64,000 nucleotides of DNA from Ascidiella aspersa (taxonomy: Eukaryota). Below, in pieces: positions 18,973 to 28,900 of the stretch (its first letter is position 1; each line of letters starts with the position of its first letter). Under the pieces are notes generated by a model that did no database searches, had not been told where the DNA came from, and saw nothing but the letters and a program-made list of their open reading frames with translations. The DNA lies in contig OZ004607.1 of assembly GCA_963924565.1 (NCBI GenBank), forward strand, positions 29,512,001 to 29,576,000. Direction: 5' to 3'. The translations under genes were made by a program, and so were the position numbers.

Positions 18973-21900
18973 TTCTGGACACTCTGCTCTAGCACGACGT
19001 TTTTGCTCGTAAAAATTACACTGGAAATATTCTTGAAATCCGTTTCCACACACCTTGTTTAAATCAACATGAAGTATTCTGAAATAACGTTGACAAACTG
19101 CATCTGATTTTAAGTTTGAAGAGCAACGTTTGAACAACGAAGTTGACCATACTAAGGAACTGTATGCCAACTTTATATTATATTTCTCATGAGGCACAAG
19201 CTTCCGTGTGTAATAAAAAGTGGCGACAGCCTGTACGATATTTAGAGTTAGTCTTCTAGTTTGTGTGCAGTTGCGTATCTAGCCGTGAGCAATAATTGTG
19301 CTGAGGTTGTCTTGATTATTTTAGGCGAAACTAAAATTGATCCAGGTTTGATATAATCACACTTTAAATTGTGAAACGGGAGCCGAGTTCACAAAATTTA
19401 AACGAAACCACAAATTTAAACGAATGCAACAAATTCTGGTGACTAATTTGTGAATGACATCTGGTTTTATTTGGTTAAACAAGTTTCCGACAGCAACATA
19501 GTTCGCATTCCGTAATTTATTTAACAAAATTAAGTTAGGTGTCGCTTAAAGTCGAATATGTGCACAAGAAATTTTAAGCCTTCAGGTGTCGCCTAAAGTC
19601 GAAATTGAGCTTAAAATTCCACGATATTTTAGCAAAAATAGTATAACATGCTAAACATTGCGCTTGACCAACAAAATAAAAAACTAAGATTTGTTTTTCG
19701 TTTAGCAAATCGTAATTCGTCGCGCCGCCGCCGAATCAAAACAGAAAACGAAACGCCTATTGATTTCATTTTGCCGACGGGCGGGTTATGATAAAACAAA
19801 AACAAAAGATAAAGGCGACGCGTGTATTTCATCCAGAAAGCGACCGTGGATTACAGGCGTGTCGAAATTTCGTCTTGGTCGTCGTCGGCGAAAAACAGAC
19901 GAACGGGCCAAAAAACAAGCGCGTATCGATTTTGCTTTCGTTTTCCTCGGGCCCCGCGCCGATGCAGCATTCGGATTGCTAATAATACACGGCGGCGGTG
20001 GGGGGAGGGGGGCGAAAAGTACGCTGCGGGACACTTTTTGGCGAATATTTCCCGGACGTTTTTTCGTCAAAATCGCGATATCGCGCGGCGCTTGGGAATT
20101 GGCGGGCGCGCGTTGCCCTGGCGCGCATGAGCGTCGCGTGCACATAGCGCTGACACGTGCGCCCAAATTGATCAACATATCGAAAATCCATACGACTGTG
20201 CTGAACACCTTATGTTCGGGCGCGGGGCCGGCGCGAAGCGACAGTCGCTAATACAATTATCGTTAAACAGATGTCCGCCGATCAAAAATAGCGGCGTTTC
20301 CGCCATGAGCAGGTCTCCGCGCGCCACCAGCGGCTTGTTGCTTTCCGCGCGCTTTAAGAAAGCACCGTGGGAGCGCGCGCTGCAGTTGTCGCGTATCGTC
20401 GAGCCTCGCCGACGGCTGCTTGCTTGCCTTCGGTTGTGGGATGTACTGCGAACTTAAGTTGTGTCGCGTTGATAGCGAGTTCTCGCGAAAATTTCTTTCT
20501 TGCCCTATAAGATCGTTTCACGACGTTTACATATAATGCGGTAGACATCGACGGGCAGGCGAGAATGGTTTGATTTGGGTGATTTTGGCAGTCGTTTGAT
20601 AAACGCTTTAGTGTAATGGGAATTTAAGTACAGCTGTCGGGGTTACTTGTACAGGTGAAGTTTATAATTATTATTTTGCCAGGTTTTGAGATGTGTGGCC
20701 TTTTTTATCATTTGTCCAATGTACAGTAAGTTGTAATGTGTCGTTTTAGCGCGCGAGATAATTGGTTATGCTAAGTTTGTCCATCACAATTTTCCCGGTC
20801 GATTTAATTTATAACCGCGTTCGTCACAAACTATACGATCGTTATTAGCAATATATCAGAACAATTTTGTTCGAGCGCTTTCGGAGTTACCGGATCTGCG
20901 TGTTTCGCATAGAACAAGGCAACAGCGAAGTGCATTAAGCTTCTCTTACCAACTTGATTAAGATTTCTATGTCCAATATTTGGCGGACAACCCGCGCGTC
21001 GACAAGTGAGCAAGCATGCGAGACAAGAAAGAAAGCAGAAGAGTGCGCCGCCGCCCATAGGCCCCAAAATAAAAATCCTTATGCGCCGAAAGGCCCGGGT
21101 ATTCATAATTTATGGATCTTCGATCGCAATTGGTGGGCAACACTTTCCCGACAGCCGGCGGGAGGCCGCCTCGCCCCACAGACCTCTTGCACCCGTCTTG
21201 CAGCAGCGGCATTATCAGCTGCCGCGGTCGGTCGTCGCCGTATTGACCACTTCGCCTAGCTGCTCCTTACGAGCCTGGGCTGTGAGTGGGCTTCCAAGCA
21301 GAAAGATATCAATTGCGTATATAGAGGCGTTAAATAGTCTGGACGTGTAAGCTGTAAAAGCCTTAGCCAAAATAGATAGCGTACTATGTTTAAAGTTGCC
21401 TATTAGCAGGTGTCTTGCTATTGCAAAACAACTTGTGTTTAGCAGATGCGTTAAAAAAAATATATATTACACCTCGCCGTTAATTTTAAACGTATTGCTG
21501 ATCACGCTGATAATACAGCCAAGTTTATCGAGCAACATTCAGATCGTGTTTTTACGTTTGGATTGCAAATTAGCCAAACGTTGGCCCAAAAGTATTCAAA
21601 CGAAGTAACTCAGATGTATAAGCTAGGGATGTAAACTGTCCAAAAGTTTGCAATAAATACGCAGCCGTTGTTTGTTTTGAATATCGAGGTTGCCAAACAC
21701 GTCTTAACCCCACTACTGCCGCAAAGATAAATTTTAATTTCTACCTTCACCAAAAAGTATTGACTTTCGACCTTCACCCCCCAAAAATATTAGAGTTTTC
21801 AAACTAACCCAGAAAGCTGATGACCGCTGATGCTGCCTAGGTCGGGGATACCAAGCCCCTCCTCCTATAGTCCCACGAGTGCCCGGGCCGCTGCCTGGCG

Positions 21901-22651
21901 TGGTGGTGATTCGACCGGGTCGATGTGCCGCTTCCCTGGAGGCAGGCCGGTGGCCCGCGTCTTCTCCACATCGATCGCCAATCGCCGGTAAACAGCAGTT
22001 GCCGTACACTGCGGCGGCCCGGGCGCGCATCGACAATTCGCTACGGTGTACAGCCGCCTGTTTCAACCCTCTTTACCATGGGCTGGGTTGATTGCTTTGA
22101 GTGTTTGGCAGGCCATACGCTGTCAGTTAGTACAGGGGCTAAAATGCAGGAGGATAAAGAAAAAAAAACAGTTCTCATTTATTTTTACCTTGAATGGGCA
22201 AACCAATCATAAGATGTGAAGAATTGCTAAGCTGTTTGGTAGCTTGAGCATTGGCAAAGGAACGTAGCACTTGTCCTACAGTTTAACATTGATGACGAAT
22301 TTTGTTCTTTAAGGAATAGGATATGGCTGTAAAAGTTGAATGGTCGGAGAATCTGTCTTTTATAGTAATTTGCAAACAGATAGATGTTGTTTTGGCTTTG
22401 TAAACTGTAATATGATTCATTTCAGTTTAATGTGATTTTCGCTCTAAATGTTTCTTCTACTCCGCCTTGTCTATAGTTTGATTTTTAAGTGTTTATCCAC
22501 CAATATACAATAAATTGTCTCGCGACGGAAAGATCAGCAACATAACAAAAATGTTTTTTTGTAAAGGTATTTAGAGATTGCTTGGTGCTGCTCCTTGTAG
22601 CTTGGTCTTTCTGCAGTAAAACTTTTGTTGTAACGCCGTTTGAAACTTAAA

Positions 22652-22737
22652 ATGAAGTCCCAAACCAGCATCACCACTACAAACATGAACACGAGAAACG
22701 ACAGAAAGATTCAAAAAGCGTCGGAAGCCGCAAAAAG
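22652..22737 (+). CDS. bHLH coding exon 1
   Basis: aaaATG context; MKSQ...KASEAAK(R)|gtgtga; phase 2 matches exon 2; acceptor ctgcag at 22616 upstream. Confidence 0.75.
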
Positions 22738-23808
22738 GTGTGATTTGTTGTACATTGAGGTTTAGCTTTAAACAATAAAAAATAACCGCTAGATTAAACG
22801 TGTTACTTCGTATCTGATTTTTAAACGTTAGATTGGATTTTCAGACATTTGTTTTAAACAATGTTTAACATAACGTATACAGCCACAAAAGTTACACCTT
22901 TGAAGCCTTGGTTTTTATACTTTATTTGGAGCAACGCTCAACGCATTATTTCGTGTTTAACTTGATAACATTGTATAACACAATCAGACATCCAAAGGGC
23001 ATTTGTATTATAACCCACGGCAAAAGAATTGCTGCCAGAACGGCGTTCCGTTAAAAAAAAATGCGGATACGCCGTTTCGGAACAAAATGTGTTTCTTTAT
23101 CATGCTATGTATCTTTTTACCATACGGCCAAATTTTCGAATGTATTTAAACCACGATTTCAGTTGCATGTTTGTGCGCTACATCGAACGGTAACCTCAGG
23201 TTTCCTAAGGTTCCTTATTTAAGATGTCCCGTTAAGAACTTTGTAACGTCATGCCTAAAAACTTCGTCGTTACTACAAGAAAACTAAACCACTTTCACCA
23301 CTGGGTAACACACTAATTAAGATTTTGTCGAATAAAACACACCAAGTAAATAACGTGCGACGATTTCGTATTGCTGAAACATCTAGGAATAGTCCTAAAC
23401 GGCTGAAGCACTTTATGAAGTAAGAAATTTCCCGCAGAAAATAAAATGCAAAAGAAAGATTCATTTGGATTAAGAAACTGAAGATGCCTATTTATAAGGC
23501 AAAAAATATTTTTTGTAAAATTTTAAGAAATTATTTTATGTTTTATACCTGTCTTGACAAACGGTCTTAAAATTAGCCCTAATAGGCTTATACCTACATC
23601 TAACGCGTGTTACGTTGTCTTCGCTAACGAAACGCATTTTTTCCACCAAAGGAAACGTCTGCGCACGGTTGCGCTGCAGCTCGCCTTTGTGCGTCTGCGT
23701 CGGCTCCTGCCTCCCAGCAACCTACCCAAGGAGAACATGAGCGAAGTGGAAATCCTGCAGGCGACGCGACGCTACATCATTCTTCTCAACGAGATGCTGC
23801 ACAACTGA
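22652..23808 (+). CDS. Small atypical bHLH protein, 2 coding exons, 80 aa
   Basis: Exons 22652-22737 and 23652-23808, phase-2 GT-AG intron. Product MKSQTSITTTNMNTRNDRKIQKASEAAKRKRLRTVALQLAFVRLRRLLPPSNLPKENMSEVEILQATRRYIILLNEMLHN*. Helix 1 (AFxxLRxLLP) and helix 2 (SxxEILxxxxxYIxxL) signatures. Confidence 0.85.
23652..23808 (+). CDS. bHLH coding exon 2 (HLH)
   Basis: ttttttccaccaaag| then a GC-rich HLH-coding frame to TGA. Confidence 0.9.
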
Positions 23809-24993
23809 GCGGTGGACTGGCGTGCTTTCAGCCTTTGCTTTCTTCATCCGCGCCGCAACCCTATTTAAAGTTCTCCGCGCGCTTTTGATTTTCCCGACGA
23901 AACGTGAATCGTCGTCTTTTATTTTTTTTGTTCAAGTTTCAGATTTGCCGTTTTCGCTCTTTCGCCCTGTTTTCTTTCGTCGGAGCTCGAGATGCTATTT
24001 TGTGTATCGCATCCGAGGCTATTTCTGGTGGTTGTTTTTCTTGAACGAGTGAACTGCGACGGCGGTTCCGAAATCTTCTTCAGCTTTGTTCTCACTATTC
24101 GTTTTGTTTTCGCGTCCACATAACTGTGAAGATGTCACTGTTGCTTGCCATTAGCTATATGTTCGAAATATTTTTTCATGTTTCTTTTATCGTAAAGTTA
24201 GCCTATCTCTACTAATTTTCAATTGATAAATGAAACGATCTATTTTTTAATTTCGAATTTGTGTAACAGAGGTTGCCATCAATTTCTTAATGATGTTTCG
24301 AAAAAATTGTTCCAAAATTTCTCGATTTTCGTGGTGTAAAGTGTGGTGAGCTGTTCCCCTCTTATGTTCCTTAGGATAACATATTATTTGTTCTTTGGCA
24401 TGTATGATGGTGTTAACTTGCCGATTTGTTATGAACTGTATTCAGAAGTGGAGCATAGTTCACCAAAATTATATAATTTTTTTTTATTTTTTAGGAAAAC
24501 CACTGCAGATTGCTAACCTTTCGAACGACAATTTTAATCAAGATTCAGAAATTTTAATCAAGATTTTGAATCGTTTATTTATAAAGCTTAAAGGTAGTTC
24601 GCGTGAATGGAAGCTAGTCTTGACGCGAGTAAAGTTGTTTTTTTTTTCGAGGATTTCAGAATCTTTTTATTTCCTACTACTCGTAACTGTGTTTTTTGCC
24701 CGGCCGCGTATTTGTGCTGTTGGGCATATCGAAAGGGCACGTGCAATAACAGTAGAAAGGTGCAAGCTTTGCTGTGGGAGTGCAATAATTAAGAGGCTGA
24801 ATGCCAAGTGGTCTATACGCTCACGACATATACCTGTTCTATATGTTTTACATTTTTCGCGACGCTGGCAGTTTGACTCACATTGCGCTAATGTATACTG
24901 CGCCACTATGGTTTGATCTGTGTGTACAGAGCCCCGATATACCTTTATGCCTCGTTTGCATGGTGTCTGGTCTTTTGTTTAGACATGCTTATC

Positions 24994-24999
24994 AATAAA
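24994..24999 (+). terminator. candidate bHLH poly(A) signal
   Basis: AATAAA followed by GT-rich sequence, ~1.2 kb after the stop. Confidence 0.55.
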
Positions 25000-25907
25000 A
25001 GTGTCTAAACGCTTGATTTGGAATATAACACGTTTTGTTGTAAACGTGTTTTCGATAGAACTTTTTATAATGTTATATCTGCGTATAAAAAGCTGGTTTA
25101 AGAACCTAATATGCTTAAATAGTTCAACAATACTAATTTAAAGACGATTTTGTTTAAAAAAAATGGTCGCAAATTTTACCCTTTTATACCGCCTGTTTTT
25201 TGTTTTTAAATAGGTTCTAATTAACTTGTGTATACCACTTATCAATGTGTGTTGACCGCCTCATTGGATTGGAGTAATACCATAACACGTAATGATATTT
25301 AATTGCTTGTGTTCCAAACAATTAAAAACCACCTTAACTTATCTCATTAGCTTCTCTAACAGTCAACAATCCTTATAATATCAGACGAATGAAAGTGAAC
25401 AATTTGTTAAACGTGGGAAAGAAATAAAATAGGCGAACAAGAAGTGACAAGATCAAAAAATAAACTTCGCGCTCTTGCAAAACTGCGTGGGCAAAAAAAC
25501 ACACAGGGGCGATATTTATTGGTGTTAACATACCACCAACCGAGGTTTGCATAAATAAAATATTGAACAAACTGTTACATATTGGATACGGCGACCGCAC
25601 AAATACCCCATAAAACAACATGTGTGGATTTTTCACTAGATTCTATAACCAGACGATTTGTGAAAACGAAAATGAGATCGAAAAGGTAATCAAGCTAAAT
25701 TTCGTAATATGCAAACGCTTCACAAAGTTTTACGCTGAAGCTCAGTGTTTTTCGGTAATACCGACTTAAAAAGAACAGTCGCCTCGTCGGATCACGGATC
25801 TATTTTCCGAAGACGTTTTTTGTAGCAACAATCAGTATAAGACGAACAGGTAACGGGAACTATATATTGAGGGTAGAAGATCGAAGATCATTTTCGTTTT
25901 TTTCGCT

Positions 25908-25949: not shown

Positions 25950-28900
25950 CTGTGGGTTTGAAAGACGTTAATATTAAAAACAACATCGAAACCAACACAT
26001 ATCCTGTTCGTACTTCCTTCAAATTAAGTTTTTTTAATAGAAAATTCCCACATCATATACCTAAAAATGTGTGTCAAGAAAAGACGATTTCGTTTGGTTA
26101 AAGCAATGCCTACAATCTGCATTAATAAGCAAATGTATGTAAGGTAATGTACATACCACTTAGGAGTTCAACCCACGTAAAGTTACAGTTAGTTTAGGGC
26201 TTAAGTATCATGCAGCTCAGGGTATCATAAAGACACTAGCCAATAATGCAGAACAAACACACTATGTTTTATAGCAAACTGTATACCTTATGCGAGTCGG
26301 TATTTATTCAATTTAATTTTTTTTTAACCATAAAAAAGTTGGCAAAATACGTTTGCAATCATCCATTGGAATATGCAAGTAGAAACAATTACCTCGATTT
26401 TCGCCAAGATGTCGGCACTGATGTCCTCCTGCGCTGCCCTTTCCGACGACGTTGAGGTTGTTGATCTTCTCCCATCCACGACGGACGCAAAGTCATCCTT
26501 CCCGTCCGGAGCGCTCCGGACCGGGGCCGGCTCGCAGATGACGATCCCAGGAAGTCCTCCAGAGTAGCTATCCAAGTCCTCCAAGGAGCGGGACTGCTGG
26601 AAGCCGCTGTCTGCGTCCGAGCTCATGTTGCCGTCGTTAGAGAGGAGCCTCTTCCCACCACGTGGATCGGTTCCGGGATGAGGCTGGAGGACGGATGACG
26701 CCGGAAGATCGCTCTTTTTTTTGTTCCTCTTGTTGCTGGTTAGTGGCGTGGACACCGAGAGCGGAGTGACGTGGCGGCTGTTGTTTGTTGGGGAATACTC
26801 TAACACGCCGTTTGTCTCCTGTGCATAGAAAGATTGAAGCGGTTTAAGTAAGACTCCATTGATTATTTGGTTTTCATGTTGTCCGTCTGACATTGTTTAC
26901 AATCAACGGCTGGCAAACGAAACAACTTATTTTATATTTAAACATGCAAGACATTTTTCTAACATGTCAATAAAGCAAGTATTTCTGCCAATCACTTTAC
27001 TGAAAAGCCAAGCGTCAAGTAACCTGCAAAATGTCAATAAAAATTGAGTAGGGTTTTTAGTTTAATGTTTTTATTTCGAATGCTAGTAAACCCAATACTG
27101 TCTATATTAGTAATCAGGACAATTGTAACAAAAGAATATAACTGGGTTCACAGATCAGCAATTAAATGAATGGATAAATTGTAAGTTGAACAATTTAATC
27201 AAACGATTGTTTTCAATCTATATAAAGCTCAAAACAGTAGAAAAAGGATGAAAATTCCGTCTCGCATTTTTTCTAAATATGCAAAACGCAAAAGATGAAC
27301 CCCAGTCCCCAGTAGTAACCCTACTCTGGTGAAATTTCTTTGAAGCAGACTAACGACAGAACTTCTAACTTACGGAAACAGAACTATTTGAAGTGGACGA
27401 AGACGCTCGATCGTCCGAGATGCTTGAGAGCTCGTCGATTGACCCCAAAGTGTGAAGCGATCGGCCCGACAGAGGCGATAGGACATCGCCGAGTGTATGG
27501 CGCCTCCTGTGGCTGCCTCCCTTGGCTTGATGTCGCCGCATGATGTCGATCGTCTCCCGCTGCTCGAGGATTACCAGTTCGAGGTCGCGCTTCTGCTGCA
27601 GCTTTTCCAGGTTGTGCTGAAGAATATAAAAACGGTAATATAAAGAAAGCAAATTTTTAATTAGTAAAACAATTAAATTTTACAAAATTTGTTAAATTAA
27701 AAGGGACAACGCTTTACAAGGGGAAAAGGATGCAGTCTTATGTAAATTATGCTTTCGAAGACGTTTCTTCTTATAGCATATAGTAATAGAGCTTTACCAT
27801 GTTTAATTTTTTTCGGATTTTTAAAGGAAAGCATTATATATTTATTTATTTTTTTGCGGTTCTAACAAATTTGTAAAATGCTTCAGTAAAAAACTGTAAA
27901 TCTGTCAAGTTCTCATACGCTTTTTAGAATAAAACACGTGAATTAAGTTAACACATTACTTTTTCCAGATTATAAAGTTACCATATTACTTTATTCCTTT
28001 GCTTATTAGCGAAAAACGGTAATTTCTATCAATTTCGACATTACATTTTATGTTATAAAAGACACACACGCATATGTGTTCATTAAATTATACGGTAGTG
28101 TTGCTACCCTTCAATCTAAAGTTGCTTATACTAACAGAATGTAGCAAACATAGGCGTATGGTTGTTTCTCGACTCGCTCCCCTCTGAGCCTGTGTAGCTT
28201 ATTTGGTAGAGCTACGGTCCCGGTATGTCCCGAGTTTAAACCTTACTGCAGTTGTTTTTCTGGCCTGCCTTGCTTGCATCATTAATCGACAGATTCTGTT
28301 AGTCTGCGATAGCTTTTTCTACGTTTTATGTTACAATCCATTTAAACCCCGCGGCCTCCATGTTGTGCGCTGGGAATTACATAATTTTCTTAATTTGCAC
28401 TAATCCAGAAGCTTCTGCACTCACCAGTTTGTTTGCTTCCTCCTCAGCAAACTCCCGGTCGATCTTGGACAGCGCTTCCTGCATCTCGCGGAGTCTGGCC
28501 TCCATCGCCGAGAAGTGGAAGTGGTTGTCGCGACGACGTCGGCCGCTCTTTGGTGCCAGGTCCTTGGAGAACTGGTCGACTTTCAGCTGGGCCGAGTTTC
28601 GTCGTCTGTTGGAAACACCGCAAACAGCGTTTTTTGTAGTTACTTGGTGGGCCAAATAAAATGCCGGTACAAGAACAGGTTCAATCTAAATGATTTTTGC
28701 GCAACTTGAAGTCCACTAAATATTACCCAATCGTGGGTATTTGCGGTGAGTGAGAACGTTTTGTATTTCTTTAACTACAGAAAAAATATTTTTCGAAATG
28801 ATGGGCGAAACAATGACACAGAGATAAATCCAAATTAAATGTTTTTTTTTACTATTTTTAAGACTCTGATAGTGACAGAAAAATCCGCTTATTTAATTAG

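What the first reader, a model, noticed from the sequence alone, without database searches (positions are those of the whole stretch)
22652..23808. 80-aa bHLH microprotein with Lys replacing the E-box-reading Glu
Seen: splicing two exons (not joined by the ORF track) gives a protein that is essentially one bHLH domain. The basic region reads AAKRKRLR where class A factors have ANARERxR, so the invariant Glu is Lys; the usual helix-2 Lys (SKxE) is Glu (SEVE). Known: that Glu makes the base contact with CANNTG. Inference: this protein either binds a non-E-box site or acts as an Id/Emc-like dominant-negative partner that has kept a basic region. It may belong to the tunicate orphan bHLH group (Bhlh-tun type) or be a new lineage-specific family; I cannot assign it from memory.
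Basis: partly seen in the sequence, partly recalled or inferred. Interest (0 to 1): 0.75.

Follow-up and report, generated by a model that had tools for sequence, protein, structure and literature searches.

The report
Tiny ascidian bHLH lacking E-box glutamate
This is a real, spliced and transcribed gene for an 80-residue protein that is little more than one bHLH dimerisation domain, belongs to a small family so far seen only in sea squirts, and carries lysine where nearly all such proteins carry the glutamate that reads the E-box.

Summary
Exon 1 (22652-22737) and exon 2 (23652-23808) are joined in a 1000-nt contig of a public run, across a 914-nt GT..AG intron at exactly the predicted junction. 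Exon 2 alone passes Pfam HLH (24.8 bits, cut-off 20.7). Ungapped HMMER alignments to TWIST1, TAL1, NEUROD1 and ASCL1 put its Lys opposite their RER glutamate. That Lys codon (23653-23655) lies in exon 2, so with this acceptor no upstream exon can restore Glu.

A search of 1.84 billion proteins gave three clear relatives: Ciona intestinalis H2XYR5 (76 aa, 72% identity), Clavelina lepadiformis CAK8677660.1 (99 aa, 54%) and a 45-aa fragment from an unnamed ENA assembly. Lys at position 9 is shared by 3 of 3 sequences that cover it. The helix-2 Glu is shared by 4 of 4.

The gene is single-copy here and forms a long-stemmed clade of its own (100/99). Its closest known domains are group A (TAL1, NeuroD1, TWIST1), not Id. 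The ascidian Hand-r protein also has Lys at position 9, so the feature is not unique.

The function is inferred: a partner-dependent modulator that cannot read a canonical CA half-site. I class it as a new member of an uncharacterised ascidian orphan bHLH family.

The parts
22570..22651 (+). 5' untranslated part of exon 1. This is a minimum extent; the true start lies at or upstream of 22570.
   Evidence: X3 contig record 17 begins at 22570. There is no ATG in 22570-22651, and an in-frame TAA lies at 22631-22633.
22652..22737 (+). Coding part of exon 1: 28 codons plus 2 bases. It encodes the N-terminal tail and basic-region positions 1-7.
   Evidence: Translation. It is covered without differences by X3 record 17. 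It has a weak TTN..RN resemblance to the Clavelina protein.
22738..23651 (+). Intron of 914 nt, GT..AG, phase 2, splitting the codon of basic-region position 8 (Arg).
   Evidence: Joint 'skips 914 GT..AG (cut +4)' in X3; sequence.
23470..23576 (.). Dispersed repeat of about 105 nt inside the intron. It is not part of the coding gene.
   Evidence: Depth spike of 1791 against about 50. One search listed 46 matches at 79-91% identity, out of 434 first-look candidates in the genome.
23652..23808 (+). Coding part of exon 2: basic-region positions 8-13, helix 1, loop, helix 2 and the stop codon.
   Evidence: Pfam HLH 24.8 bits; translation; 72% identity to Ciona H2XYR5.
23653..23655 (+). AAA codon: Lys at basic-region position 9, the usual E-box-reading Glu.
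   Evidence: Ungapped alignments to TWIST1, TAL1, NEUROD1 and ASCL1. Lys is conserved in the Ciona and Clavelina proteins.
23743..23745 (+). GAA codon: Glu at the start of helix 2, where most bHLH proteins have Lys.
   Evidence: This column is invariant in alignment A1, 4 of 4. By my reading of the rows printed, 10 of the 13 own-genome HLH domains have Lys here.
23809..25014 (+). 3' untranslated region, with AATAAA at 24994-24999.
   Evidence: X3 records 17 (to 24484) and 20 (24493-25014) have similar depth, about 13-14, and depth is 0 in 25122-25318. AATAAA was read. The 3' end is inferred.

Best explanation
This is a functional, transcribed two-exon gene in what is evidently an ascidian genome. 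It encodes an 80-residue protein that is essentially one bHLH domain.

It belongs to a small orphan family so far seen only in ascidians: Ciona intestinalis H2XYR5, Clavelina lepadiformis CAK8677660.1, and one fragment from an unnamed assembly. By similarity the family sits among group A (Twist/Hand/SCL-like) bHLH proteins.

Shown here: the hydrophobic core of the HLH is intact, so the protein should dimerise. The basic region keeps 6 Lys/Arg in 13 positions, including positions 8, 10 and 12. The family has Lys at position 9 instead of Glu, and Glu instead of the Lys that starts helix 2.

Inferred: the protein has no activation or repression domain and cannot make the canonical Glu contact to the CA of CANNTG. 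It therefore most likely acts through a partner (an E protein or a tissue-specific group A factor). It would either make the dimer unable to hold a full E-box, giving Id-like dominant-negative behaviour with nuclear targeting by the KRKR stretch, or turn it into an asymmetric dimer that reads one canonical and one non-canonical half-site.
For: Real gene:
- A spliced contig lies exactly at the predicted junction, and exon-only coverage runs to an AATAAA.
- Exon 2 passes Pfam HLH above the cut-off.

Conserved family:
- Relatives score E 9.7e-13 (Ciona, 72% identity), 2.4e-8 (Clavelina, 54%) and 8e-4 (ENA fragment) in 1.84 billion proteins.
- The proteins are of similar small size, 76 and 99 aa. 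The Clavelina protein has an internal Met that would give 75 aa.
- Lys-9 is present in 3 of 3 sequences that cover the position, and the helix-2 Glu in 4 of 4.
- The family clade has support 100/99, and the gene is single-copy in this genome.

Fold:
- The AF2 model of the Ciona orthologue has pLDDT 80.8, with a helix at 15-43, a loop, and a helix at 56-75.
- The ranks I read in the Foldseek PDB listing are almost all bHLH or HLH chains, with TAL1 first at TMq 0.65 and rmsd 1.8.

Group A affinity:
- The family profile scores TAL1 40.7, NeuroD1 35.4, TWIST1 33.6 and MyoD 31 bits, against ID3 21.9 and E47 13.8.

Role of position 9:
- Passages of the review PMC8431614 say Glu-9 makes the strongest DNA contact and that all factors binding the CA core have it.
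- The same passages say bHLH-PAS proteins with Ala, Ser or Ile at position 9 read non-canonical half-sites in asymmetric dimers, and that positions 47-51 touch the phosphate backbone.
- TWIST2 E75K, the same substitution at the same conserved Glu, is dominant in humans (PMC10530651, passages).
Against: - No binding, dimerisation or expression-pattern data exist for any member, so the mechanism is inference.
- Ascidian Hand-r has Lys at position 9 (R-K-R-E-R) and is described as a transcription factor required for Ebf activation (bioRxiv 10.1101/138701, passages). Lys-9 therefore need not mean an inhibitory role.
- Small bHLH-only proteins can be ordinary E-box binders. Ciona Bhlh-tun1 (139 aa) binds E-boxes in vitro (PMC7693978, passages).
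- The only run on record as RNA (X4, about 6% of it read) gave no reads on the exons. The supporting run X3 has library kind '?'.
- The genome-wide Pfam HLH scan of this genome did not list this locus among its 41 matches.
- The family is known from only four sequences, two of which are unverified gene predictions.
Confidence: 0.6

Rival explanations
1. A pure Id/Emc-like sink. The protein never touches DNA. It only sequesters E protein or group A partners, and the Lys/Arg-rich stretch serves as a nuclear localisation signal.
For: - It is a single-domain protein of 80 aa with no effector domain.
- Both residues that normally face DNA are charge-reversed, and this is conserved.
- The helix-2 wording S-E-V-E-I-L-Q resembles Id helix 2 (my recollection), and the family profile does hit ID3, ID1 and ID2 at 18-22 bits.
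- The same E-to-K change in TWIST2 is dominant.
Against: - A basic region with 6 of 13 Lys/Arg and Arg/Lys at positions 8, 10 and 12 is conserved across two ascidian orders. Id proteins lack one (PMC8431614, PMC7693978; passages).
- Similarity to Id is lower than to TAL1, NeuroD1, TWIST1 and MyoD.
- Ciona already has two Id genes (PMC7693978).
Confidence: 0.25
2. A DNA-binding partner with a new half-site. As with AHR, HIF or SIM paired with ARNT, the Lys-9 monomer reads a non-CA half-site next to the partner's canonical half-site, possibly the same specificity as Hand-r.
For: - Arg/Lys is retained at the phosphate-contact positions 8, 10 and 12.
- bHLH-PAS proteins without Glu-9 are a precedent (PMC8431614).
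- By the plant (Toledo-Ortiz) criteria it would be classed as a non-E-box DNA binder (PMC4312455).
- Hand-r shares the R-K-R-x-R pattern and acts as a positive regulator.
Against: - Glu in place of the helix-2 Lys removes a likely backbone contact and adds negative charge near DNA (role of the region from PMC8431614).
- There is no effector domain.
- No binding data exist.
Confidence: 0.25
3. A decaying or non-functional gene copy: a transcribed pseudogene, or a lineage-specific remnant with no function.
For: - It sits on a long stem in the tree (1.53 changes per column).
- Canonical DNA-contact residues are lost.
- The RNA run X4 gave no reads on the exons.
Against: - The frame is open, the GT..AG intron is intact, the start has A at -3, and a polyadenylation signal is present.
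- A spliced transcript was seen.
- Identity to Ciona is 72% over 50 residues, and the odd residues themselves are conserved in two orders.
- It is single-copy with no parent paralogue in the genome.
Confidence: 0.04
4. A mis-modelled gene. The true protein would use another first exon or acceptor and have a canonical basic region.
For: Only one contig supports the junction, and that contig ends at 22570, so the 5' end of the transcript was not seen.
Against: - Positions 9-13 (K-R-L-R-T) are encoded in exon 2 itself, downstream of the acceptor that is used.
- An in-frame stop lies 7 codons upstream of the ATG, inside the contig.
- The Ciona and Clavelina predictions have the same Lys and a similar length.
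Confidence: 0.03

Closest known systems
Ciona intestinalis H2XYR5 (76 aa) and Clavelina lepadiformis CAK8677660.1 (99 aa), both named only 'BHLH domain-containing protein' or 'unnamed protein product'
   Same: They have the same size class and consist of a bHLH domain only. Identity over exon 2 is 72% and 54%. Both have Lys at position 9 and Glu at the start of helix 2. They form one clade with the window protein (100/99).
   Different: The N-terminal tails are barely alignable. Neither is characterised in any paper found.
Tunicate orphan bHLH genes Bhlh-tun1 to Bhlh-tun4 of Ciona (review PMC7693978, passages)
   Same: They are small bHLH proteins without counterparts outside tunicates and are classed as an outgroup. 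Bhlh-tun3 has not been analysed for expression, and Bhlh-tun4 gave no distinct zygotic signal.
   Different: Bhlh-tun1 is 139 aa and binds E-boxes. Bhlh-tun2 is NHLH-like. Whether H2XYR5 equals Bhlh-tun3 or Bhlh-tun4 could not be tested.
Ascidian Hand-r / NoTrlc
   Same: It reads R-K-R-x-R at positions 8-12, with Lys at position 9. This holds in the own-genome copy and in all four other ascidian sequences fetched, 5 of 5. It is the third-best match of the family profile in this genome (27.4 bits).
   Different: Hand-r proteins are 199-298 aa with long flanks. They keep Lys at the start of helix 2, and their bHLH is encoded without an intron in the basic region. The tree does not join the two groups, but it does not reject a joint clade either (AU p 0.33).
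TAL1/SCL and other Twist-superfamily group A bHLH proteins (TWIST1, Hand)
   Same: They are the best sequence and fold matches among solved structures. TAL1 scores 40.7 bits, and Foldseek ranks it first at 39% identity for the Ciona orthologue. TWIST1 is the best match for the window peptide alone.
   Different: All of these have Glu-9 and the helix-2 Lys, and they carry additional regions. There is no supported orthology.
Id / Extramacrochaetae (group D HLH inhibitors)
   Same: They are small, have no effector domain, lack the E-box-reading Glu, and are expected to act by dimerisation.
   Different: Id proteins lack a basic region altogether, whereas this family keeps a conserved one. Sequence similarity is weaker than to group A. 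No Id chain matched the exon 2 peptide alone at E <= 10.

Membership tests
bHLH superfamily (Pfam PF00010 HLH) | Profile match above the curated cut-off | tested here: met
   Exon 2 peptide scores 24.8 bits against a cut-off of 20.7, E 1.9e-5, profile 10-52 of 53.
bHLH superfamily (Pfam PF00010 HLH) | Helix-loop-helix fold with the basic region continuous with helix 1 | tested here: met
   This was tested on the Ciona orthologue only, because the joined window protein was not submitted. AF2 pLDDT is 80.8, with helices at 15-43 and 56-75. The Foldseek ranks I read are almost all bHLH or HLH chains, but the best E-value is only 6.4e-3.
E-box-binding bHLH (groups A and B) | Glu at basic-region position 9, together with Arg at position 12 | tested here: not met
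   Position 9 is Lys; Arg-12 is present. In this genome, 20 of 22 HLH loci that cover position 9 have Glu.
Group A, Twist superfamily (Twist, Hand, SCL, NSCL and others) | Supported placement with a family of that group in a tree | tested here: inconclusive
   Best matches are TAL1, NeuroD1, TWIST1 and MyoD, and Hand-like and Hand-r loci in the own genome. In the tree the sister is unsupported (53/76), and the AU test neither supports nor rejects a clade with Hand or Hand-r (p 0.33).
Id/Emc (group D) | No basic region | tested here: not met
   6 of 13 basic-region positions are Lys or Arg in the window protein (my count) and in the Ciona and Clavelina proteins.
Id/Emc (group D) | Closest sequence similarity is to Id proteins | tested here: not met
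   ID3 21.9, ID1 20.9 and ID2 18.4 bits against TAL1 40.7. No Id chain matched the exon 2 peptide at E <= 10.
Tunicate orphan bHLH ('Bhlh-tun') group | No identifiable counterpart outside tunicates | tested here: met
   5 hits at E <= 0.001 in 1.84 billion representatives. These are two ascidian proteins, one fragment of unnamed source, one weak fish protein that itself matches TAL1 best (40 bits), and one repeat protein. Many tunicate proteomes are not in these collections.
Tunicate orphan bHLH ('Bhlh-tun') group | Identity with a named gene (Bhlh-tun3 KY.Chr10.1238 or Bhlh-tun4 KH.L41.39) | not testable with these tools
   No paper links H2XYR5 to a KH or KY model.
Hand-r / NoTrlc | Orthology to Ciona Hand-r | tested here: not met
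   The Hand-r orthologue of this genome is a different locus, on contig C5. The window protein falls outside the Hand-r clade (84/91).
microProtein (single-domain competitor of larger factors) | A small protein made of one interaction domain related to larger regulators | tested here: met
   It is 80 aa. Exon 1 has no Pfam family and exon 2 has HLH only. Competitive action itself was not tested.

The most novel reading that the evidence does not exclude
Ascidians carry two independent bHLH lines, Hand-r and this microprotein family, in which the otherwise near-universal position-9 Glu of group A proteins is Lys within an R-K-R-x-R basic region. The boldest reading my evidence allows has two parts. 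First, this motif defines a tunicate-specific, non-CANNTG half-site code. Second, the microprotein is the shrunken descendant of a Twist-superfamily gene (TAL/SCL-like or Hand-like) that ascidians otherwise appear to lack. It would act as a natural, effector-less competitor or co-reader for Hand-r-type sites.
Probability: 0.15. Interest if true: 0.65.

Novelty: new member of a known kind. Interest (0 to 1): 0.42.

Why it matters
Ascidian embryos are a leading system for complete gene-regulatory networks, and bHLH factors (Mesp, Hand-r, Ebf, Mrf, Neurog) sit at key decisions in them. An expressed, conserved, 80-residue bHLH-only protein that cannot read a CA half-site is a candidate hidden modulator of those factors. 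It may also be missing from annotation here: the protein collection searched returned no self-hit for this genome.

Lys at position 9 is shared with the well-studied Hand-r. This makes a concrete question testable: what do group-A-like bHLH proteins with R-K-R-x-R bind? A review of bHLH specificity (PMC8431614, passages) names only PAS proteins and Id as exceptions to Glu-9 among the human factors it aligns.

If the protein turns out to be merely an Id-like sink, it is an ordinary addition to a known class.

Tried and rejected
Searches that led nowhere:
- The search for homologous proteins with the exon 2 peptide found no candidate.
- With the family alignment it returned only the three relatives already known, out of 1241 candidates.
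- ESM Atlas look-alikes of the Ciona orthologue (best score 0.88) and of the fish protein were generic HLH clusters.
- The earlier-findings look-ups gave nothing on this gene.

Ideas considered and rejected:
- Chance ORF. Rejected by the Pfam match, the relatives and the spliced contig.
- An alternative upstream exon restoring Glu. Rejected because the Lys codon is in exon 2.
- Id family membership. Rejected: the basic region is present and Id similarity is lower.
- Orthology to Hand-r. Rejected: Hand-r is a separate locus and a separate clade.
- A vertebrate orthologue. The fish hit P0004 keeps the helix-2 Lys, has an acidic stretch in place of a basic region, and matches TAL1 best. I read it as a TAL-like protein of a low-quality prediction, not a family member.
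- P0003 is a tandem-repeat protein with six short matches. I treated it as spurious and did not examine it further.

Rows left out:
- The tree used 13 of the 30 own-genome HLH loci. I left out 17 whose domain is split by an intron or only partly matched: L006, L009, L011, L013-L016, L018-L021, L023-L025, L028, L029, L032.
- I also left out the 11 matches that have no locus, and P0003 and P0004.
- The position-9 count used the 22 of 30 loci whose match starts at or before profile position 9. The 8 left out are L015, L017, L022, L026, L028, L029, L030 and L031.

Names from memory:
- The names I give to own-genome loci other than L007 (Hand-like, MRF-like, Mesp-like, Figla-like) are my recollection of family motifs. 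They do not come from a call.

Neighbouring ORFs:
- Six neighbouring ORFs had no Pfam family.

Not seen:
- Supplementary tables of PMC1828162 and the Ciona bHLH surveys, which may list the Ciona orphans and family losses.
Full report
**What is in the sequence**

The + strand holds an ATG at 22652. An in-frame TAA lies seven codons upstream (22631-22633), and there is no other ATG back to 22570. The frame runs 86 nt to 22737 and is followed by GT. An AG at 23650-23651 precedes a 157-nt stretch that ends in TGA at 23806-23808. Together this makes 243 nt, i.e. 80 codons plus the stop.

Exon 1 (28 codons) and exon 2 were analysed apart.

**Is the splice real?**

One call of read laying on window 20000-25900 laid four runs of the same coded organism.

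- Runs X1 and X2 cover all 30 bins and look like genomic DNA. They show no joint.
- Run X3 (library kind not on record) covers only 13 of 30 bins. It holds a 1000-nt contig on 22570-22733 and 23648-24484, reported as 'skips 914, GT..AG (cut +4)'. That is the 22737/23652 junction; five letters fit either side.
- A second X3 contig covers 24493-25014 at the same depth (about 13-14). It ends 15 nt after an AATAAA at 24994-24999, and depth is 0 in the next bin.

So there is one transcription unit from at or before 22570 to about 25014, with a 3' UTR of about 1.2 kb.

The one run on record as RNA (X4, raw reads, about 6% of it read) put no reads on the exons. Expression is therefore shown in one sample only.

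**Is it a bHLH, and is the Glu really replaced?**

The exon 2 peptide alone passes Pfam HLH: 24.8 bits, cut-off 20.7, E 1.9e-5, profile positions 10-52 of 53. Exon 1 matches nothing.

Against PDB sequences, 4 chains match at E <= 10: TWIST1 (1.6e-4), TAL1, NEUROD1 and ASCL1. All four alignments are ungapped through the basic region. They put the query's R-K-R-L-R under R-E-R-x-R, and its S-E-V-E under S-K-x-x.

The Lys codon (23653-23655) lies inside exon 2. With this acceptor, no upstream exon could restore Glu.

The genome-wide Pfam scan of this genome listed 41 HLH matches and did not include this locus. Only 60 first-look candidates were scored, and this domain scores near the bottom of that list.

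**Relatives**

HMMER against 1.84 billion representative proteins found 5 hits at E <= 0.001.

| Hit | Size | Source | Identity | E-value |
|---|---|---|---|---|
| P0001 | 76 aa | Ciona intestinalis, UniRef H2XYR5 | 72% | 9.7e-13 |
| P0002 | 99 aa | Clavelina lepadiformis, CAK8677660.1 | 54% | 2.4e-8 |
| P0005 | 45-aa fragment | unnamed ENA assembly | 54% | 8.0e-4 |
| P0004 | 284 aa | low-quality fish prediction | 43% | 5.9e-4 |
| P0003 | 456 aa | tandem-repeat protein; source not looked up | 39% | 6.4e-8 |

- The two named species belong to different ascidian orders, Phlebobranchia and Aplousobranchia.
- In alignment A1, Lys at position 9 is present in all 3 sequences that reach it. The helix-2 Glu is invariant in 4 of 4, and the core residues (A-F, L-R, L-P, E-I-L, Y-I, L) are invariant.
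- Six of the 13 basic-region positions are Lys or Arg in the Ciona and Clavelina proteins. By my count, the same holds for the window protein.
- The word-indexed search found nothing with exon 2 alone, and only the same three relatives with the alignment. Neither returned a self-hit, so the window's protein does not appear to be in that collection.
- The fish protein matches TAL1 best (40 bits), keeps the helix-2 Lys and has an acidic stretch where the basic region should be. I do not count it as family.

**Place among bHLH proteins**

- In its own genome the gene is single-copy. The family profile finds itself (99 bits), then a Hand-like locus on C8 (31.3), the Hand-r locus on C5 (27.4), and MRF-like, Mesp-like and Figla-like loci (25-27 bits). 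Apart from Hand-r, these names are my recollection.
- Against PDB the family profile ranks TAL1 40.7, NeuroD1 35.4, TWIST1 33.6, MyoD 31.0, ASCL1 24.7, ID3 21.9, ID1 20.9, ID2 18.4 and E47 13.8 bits.
- An AF2 model of the Ciona orthologue has pLDDT 80.8 and shows one long helix (15-43), a loop, and a second helix (56-75). Foldseek gave no match at E <= 0.001, but the ranks I read are almost all bHLH or HLH chains, with TAL1 first (E 6.4e-3, TMq 0.65, rmsd 1.8 Å, 39% identity).
- A maximum-likelihood tree of 21 rows and 55 columns puts the four family members in one clade (100/99) on a long stem (1.53 changes per column). The sister group is unsupported.
- An AU test does not reject a clade with Hand-r, with or without Hand (p 0.33). 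The origin within group A is therefore unresolved.
- The family's phase-2 intron in the codon of position 8 is not shared by the Hand-like and Hand-r loci here. Their basic regions lie in one open frame together with the upstream sequence.

**An unexpected parallel**

The C5 locus is the orthologue of Ciona NoTrlc/Hand-r. Its best named hits are a C. intestinalis transcription factor and C. savignyi 'Orphan basic helix-loop-helix factor NoTlc'.

It and all four other ascidian Hand-r sequences read R-K-R-E-R at positions 8-12. Of the 22 own-genome HLH loci that cover profile position 9, 20 have Glu, one has Lys (Hand-r) and one has Ala (a PAS-type locus by my reading).

So Lys-9 is rare but not unique to this gene. 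It also occurs in a factor that is needed for Ebf activation in Ciona (bioRxiv 10.1101/138701, passages).

**How it most likely works**

Shown:
- An intact dimerisation core.
- A conserved Lys/Arg-rich basic region.
- Conserved charge reversal at two DNA-facing positions.
- No other domain, and small size in all members.

From the literature (passages only):
- Glu-9 makes the strongest base contact, and all factors that bind the CA core have it.
- PAS proteins with Ala, Ser or Ile at position 9 bind non-canonical half-sites in asymmetric dimers.
- Positions 47-51 touch the phosphate backbone (PMC8431614).
- TWIST2 E75K, at the same conserved Glu, is dominant in patients (PMC10530651).
- Plant surveys class proteins with a basic region but without this Glu as non-E-box binders (PMC4312455).

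Inferred: the protein dimerises with an E protein or a group A partner and changes what that dimer can bind. It would either block E-box binding (Id-like) or shift it to an asymmetric site. I cannot separate these two outcomes with the tools here. I put about 0.6 on this partner-dependent, non-canonical reading as a whole, split roughly evenly between the two.

**Known or new?**

- The review PMC7693978 (passages) lists four 'tunicate bHLH' genes. Bhlh-tun1 (139 aa, E-box binder) and Bhlh-tun2 (NHLH-like) are clearly different from this protein.
- Bhlh-tun3 has not been analysed for expression, and Bhlh-tun4 gave no distinct signal. The Ciona orthologue H2XYR5 may be one of these two.
- No paper in the library holds H2XYR5 or CAK8677660. 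Only that review holds the Bhlh-tun3 and Bhlh-tun4 names.
- I file the window's gene as a new member of an existing but uncharacterised ascidian orphan bHLH family. The point of interest is the conserved R-K-R-x-R basic region shared with Hand-r.

**Verdict**

Interest is moderate (0.42).

Noticed in passing
window 23470-23576 (inside the intron): A dispersed repeat of about 105 nt. One search listed 46 matches at 79-91% identity on many contigs, from 434 first-look candidates. It causes a depth spike and many loose ends. In several listed places two copies lie close together in opposite orientation, e.g. G000:C9:6704252-6704516.
   Followed up: partly
G000:C5:33848920-33849072 (L007) and proteins P0006-P0009: Ascidian Hand-r/NoTrlc has Lys at the E-box-reading position 9 (R-K-R-E-R) in 5 of 5 sequences seen. 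I found no comment on this in the passages I read.
   Followed up: partly
G000:C2:9756884-9775504: A tandem cluster of five weak HLH matches (24-31 bits) within 19 kb, on both strands. It may be a lineage-specific bHLH expansion.
   Followed up: no
window 19760-22100: A G+C-rich block (0.485 against about 0.38 around it) just upstream of the gene. It has long overlapping ORFs on both strands, none with a Pfam family.
   Followed up: partly
window 25357-25898 and 26324-26893 (-): X3 contigs and a few X4 RNA reads lie at 25319-25898. A 189-aa ATG-started ORF on the minus strand at 26324-26893 has no Pfam hit. This is probably a neighbouring gene of unknown kind.
   Followed up: no
protein P0004 (Coryphaenoides rupestris KAG7282237.1): A fish low-quality prediction with a duplicated TAL1-like HLH whose 'basic' region is acidic. 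It may be an assembly artefact or a degenerate TAL-like gene.
   Followed up: partly
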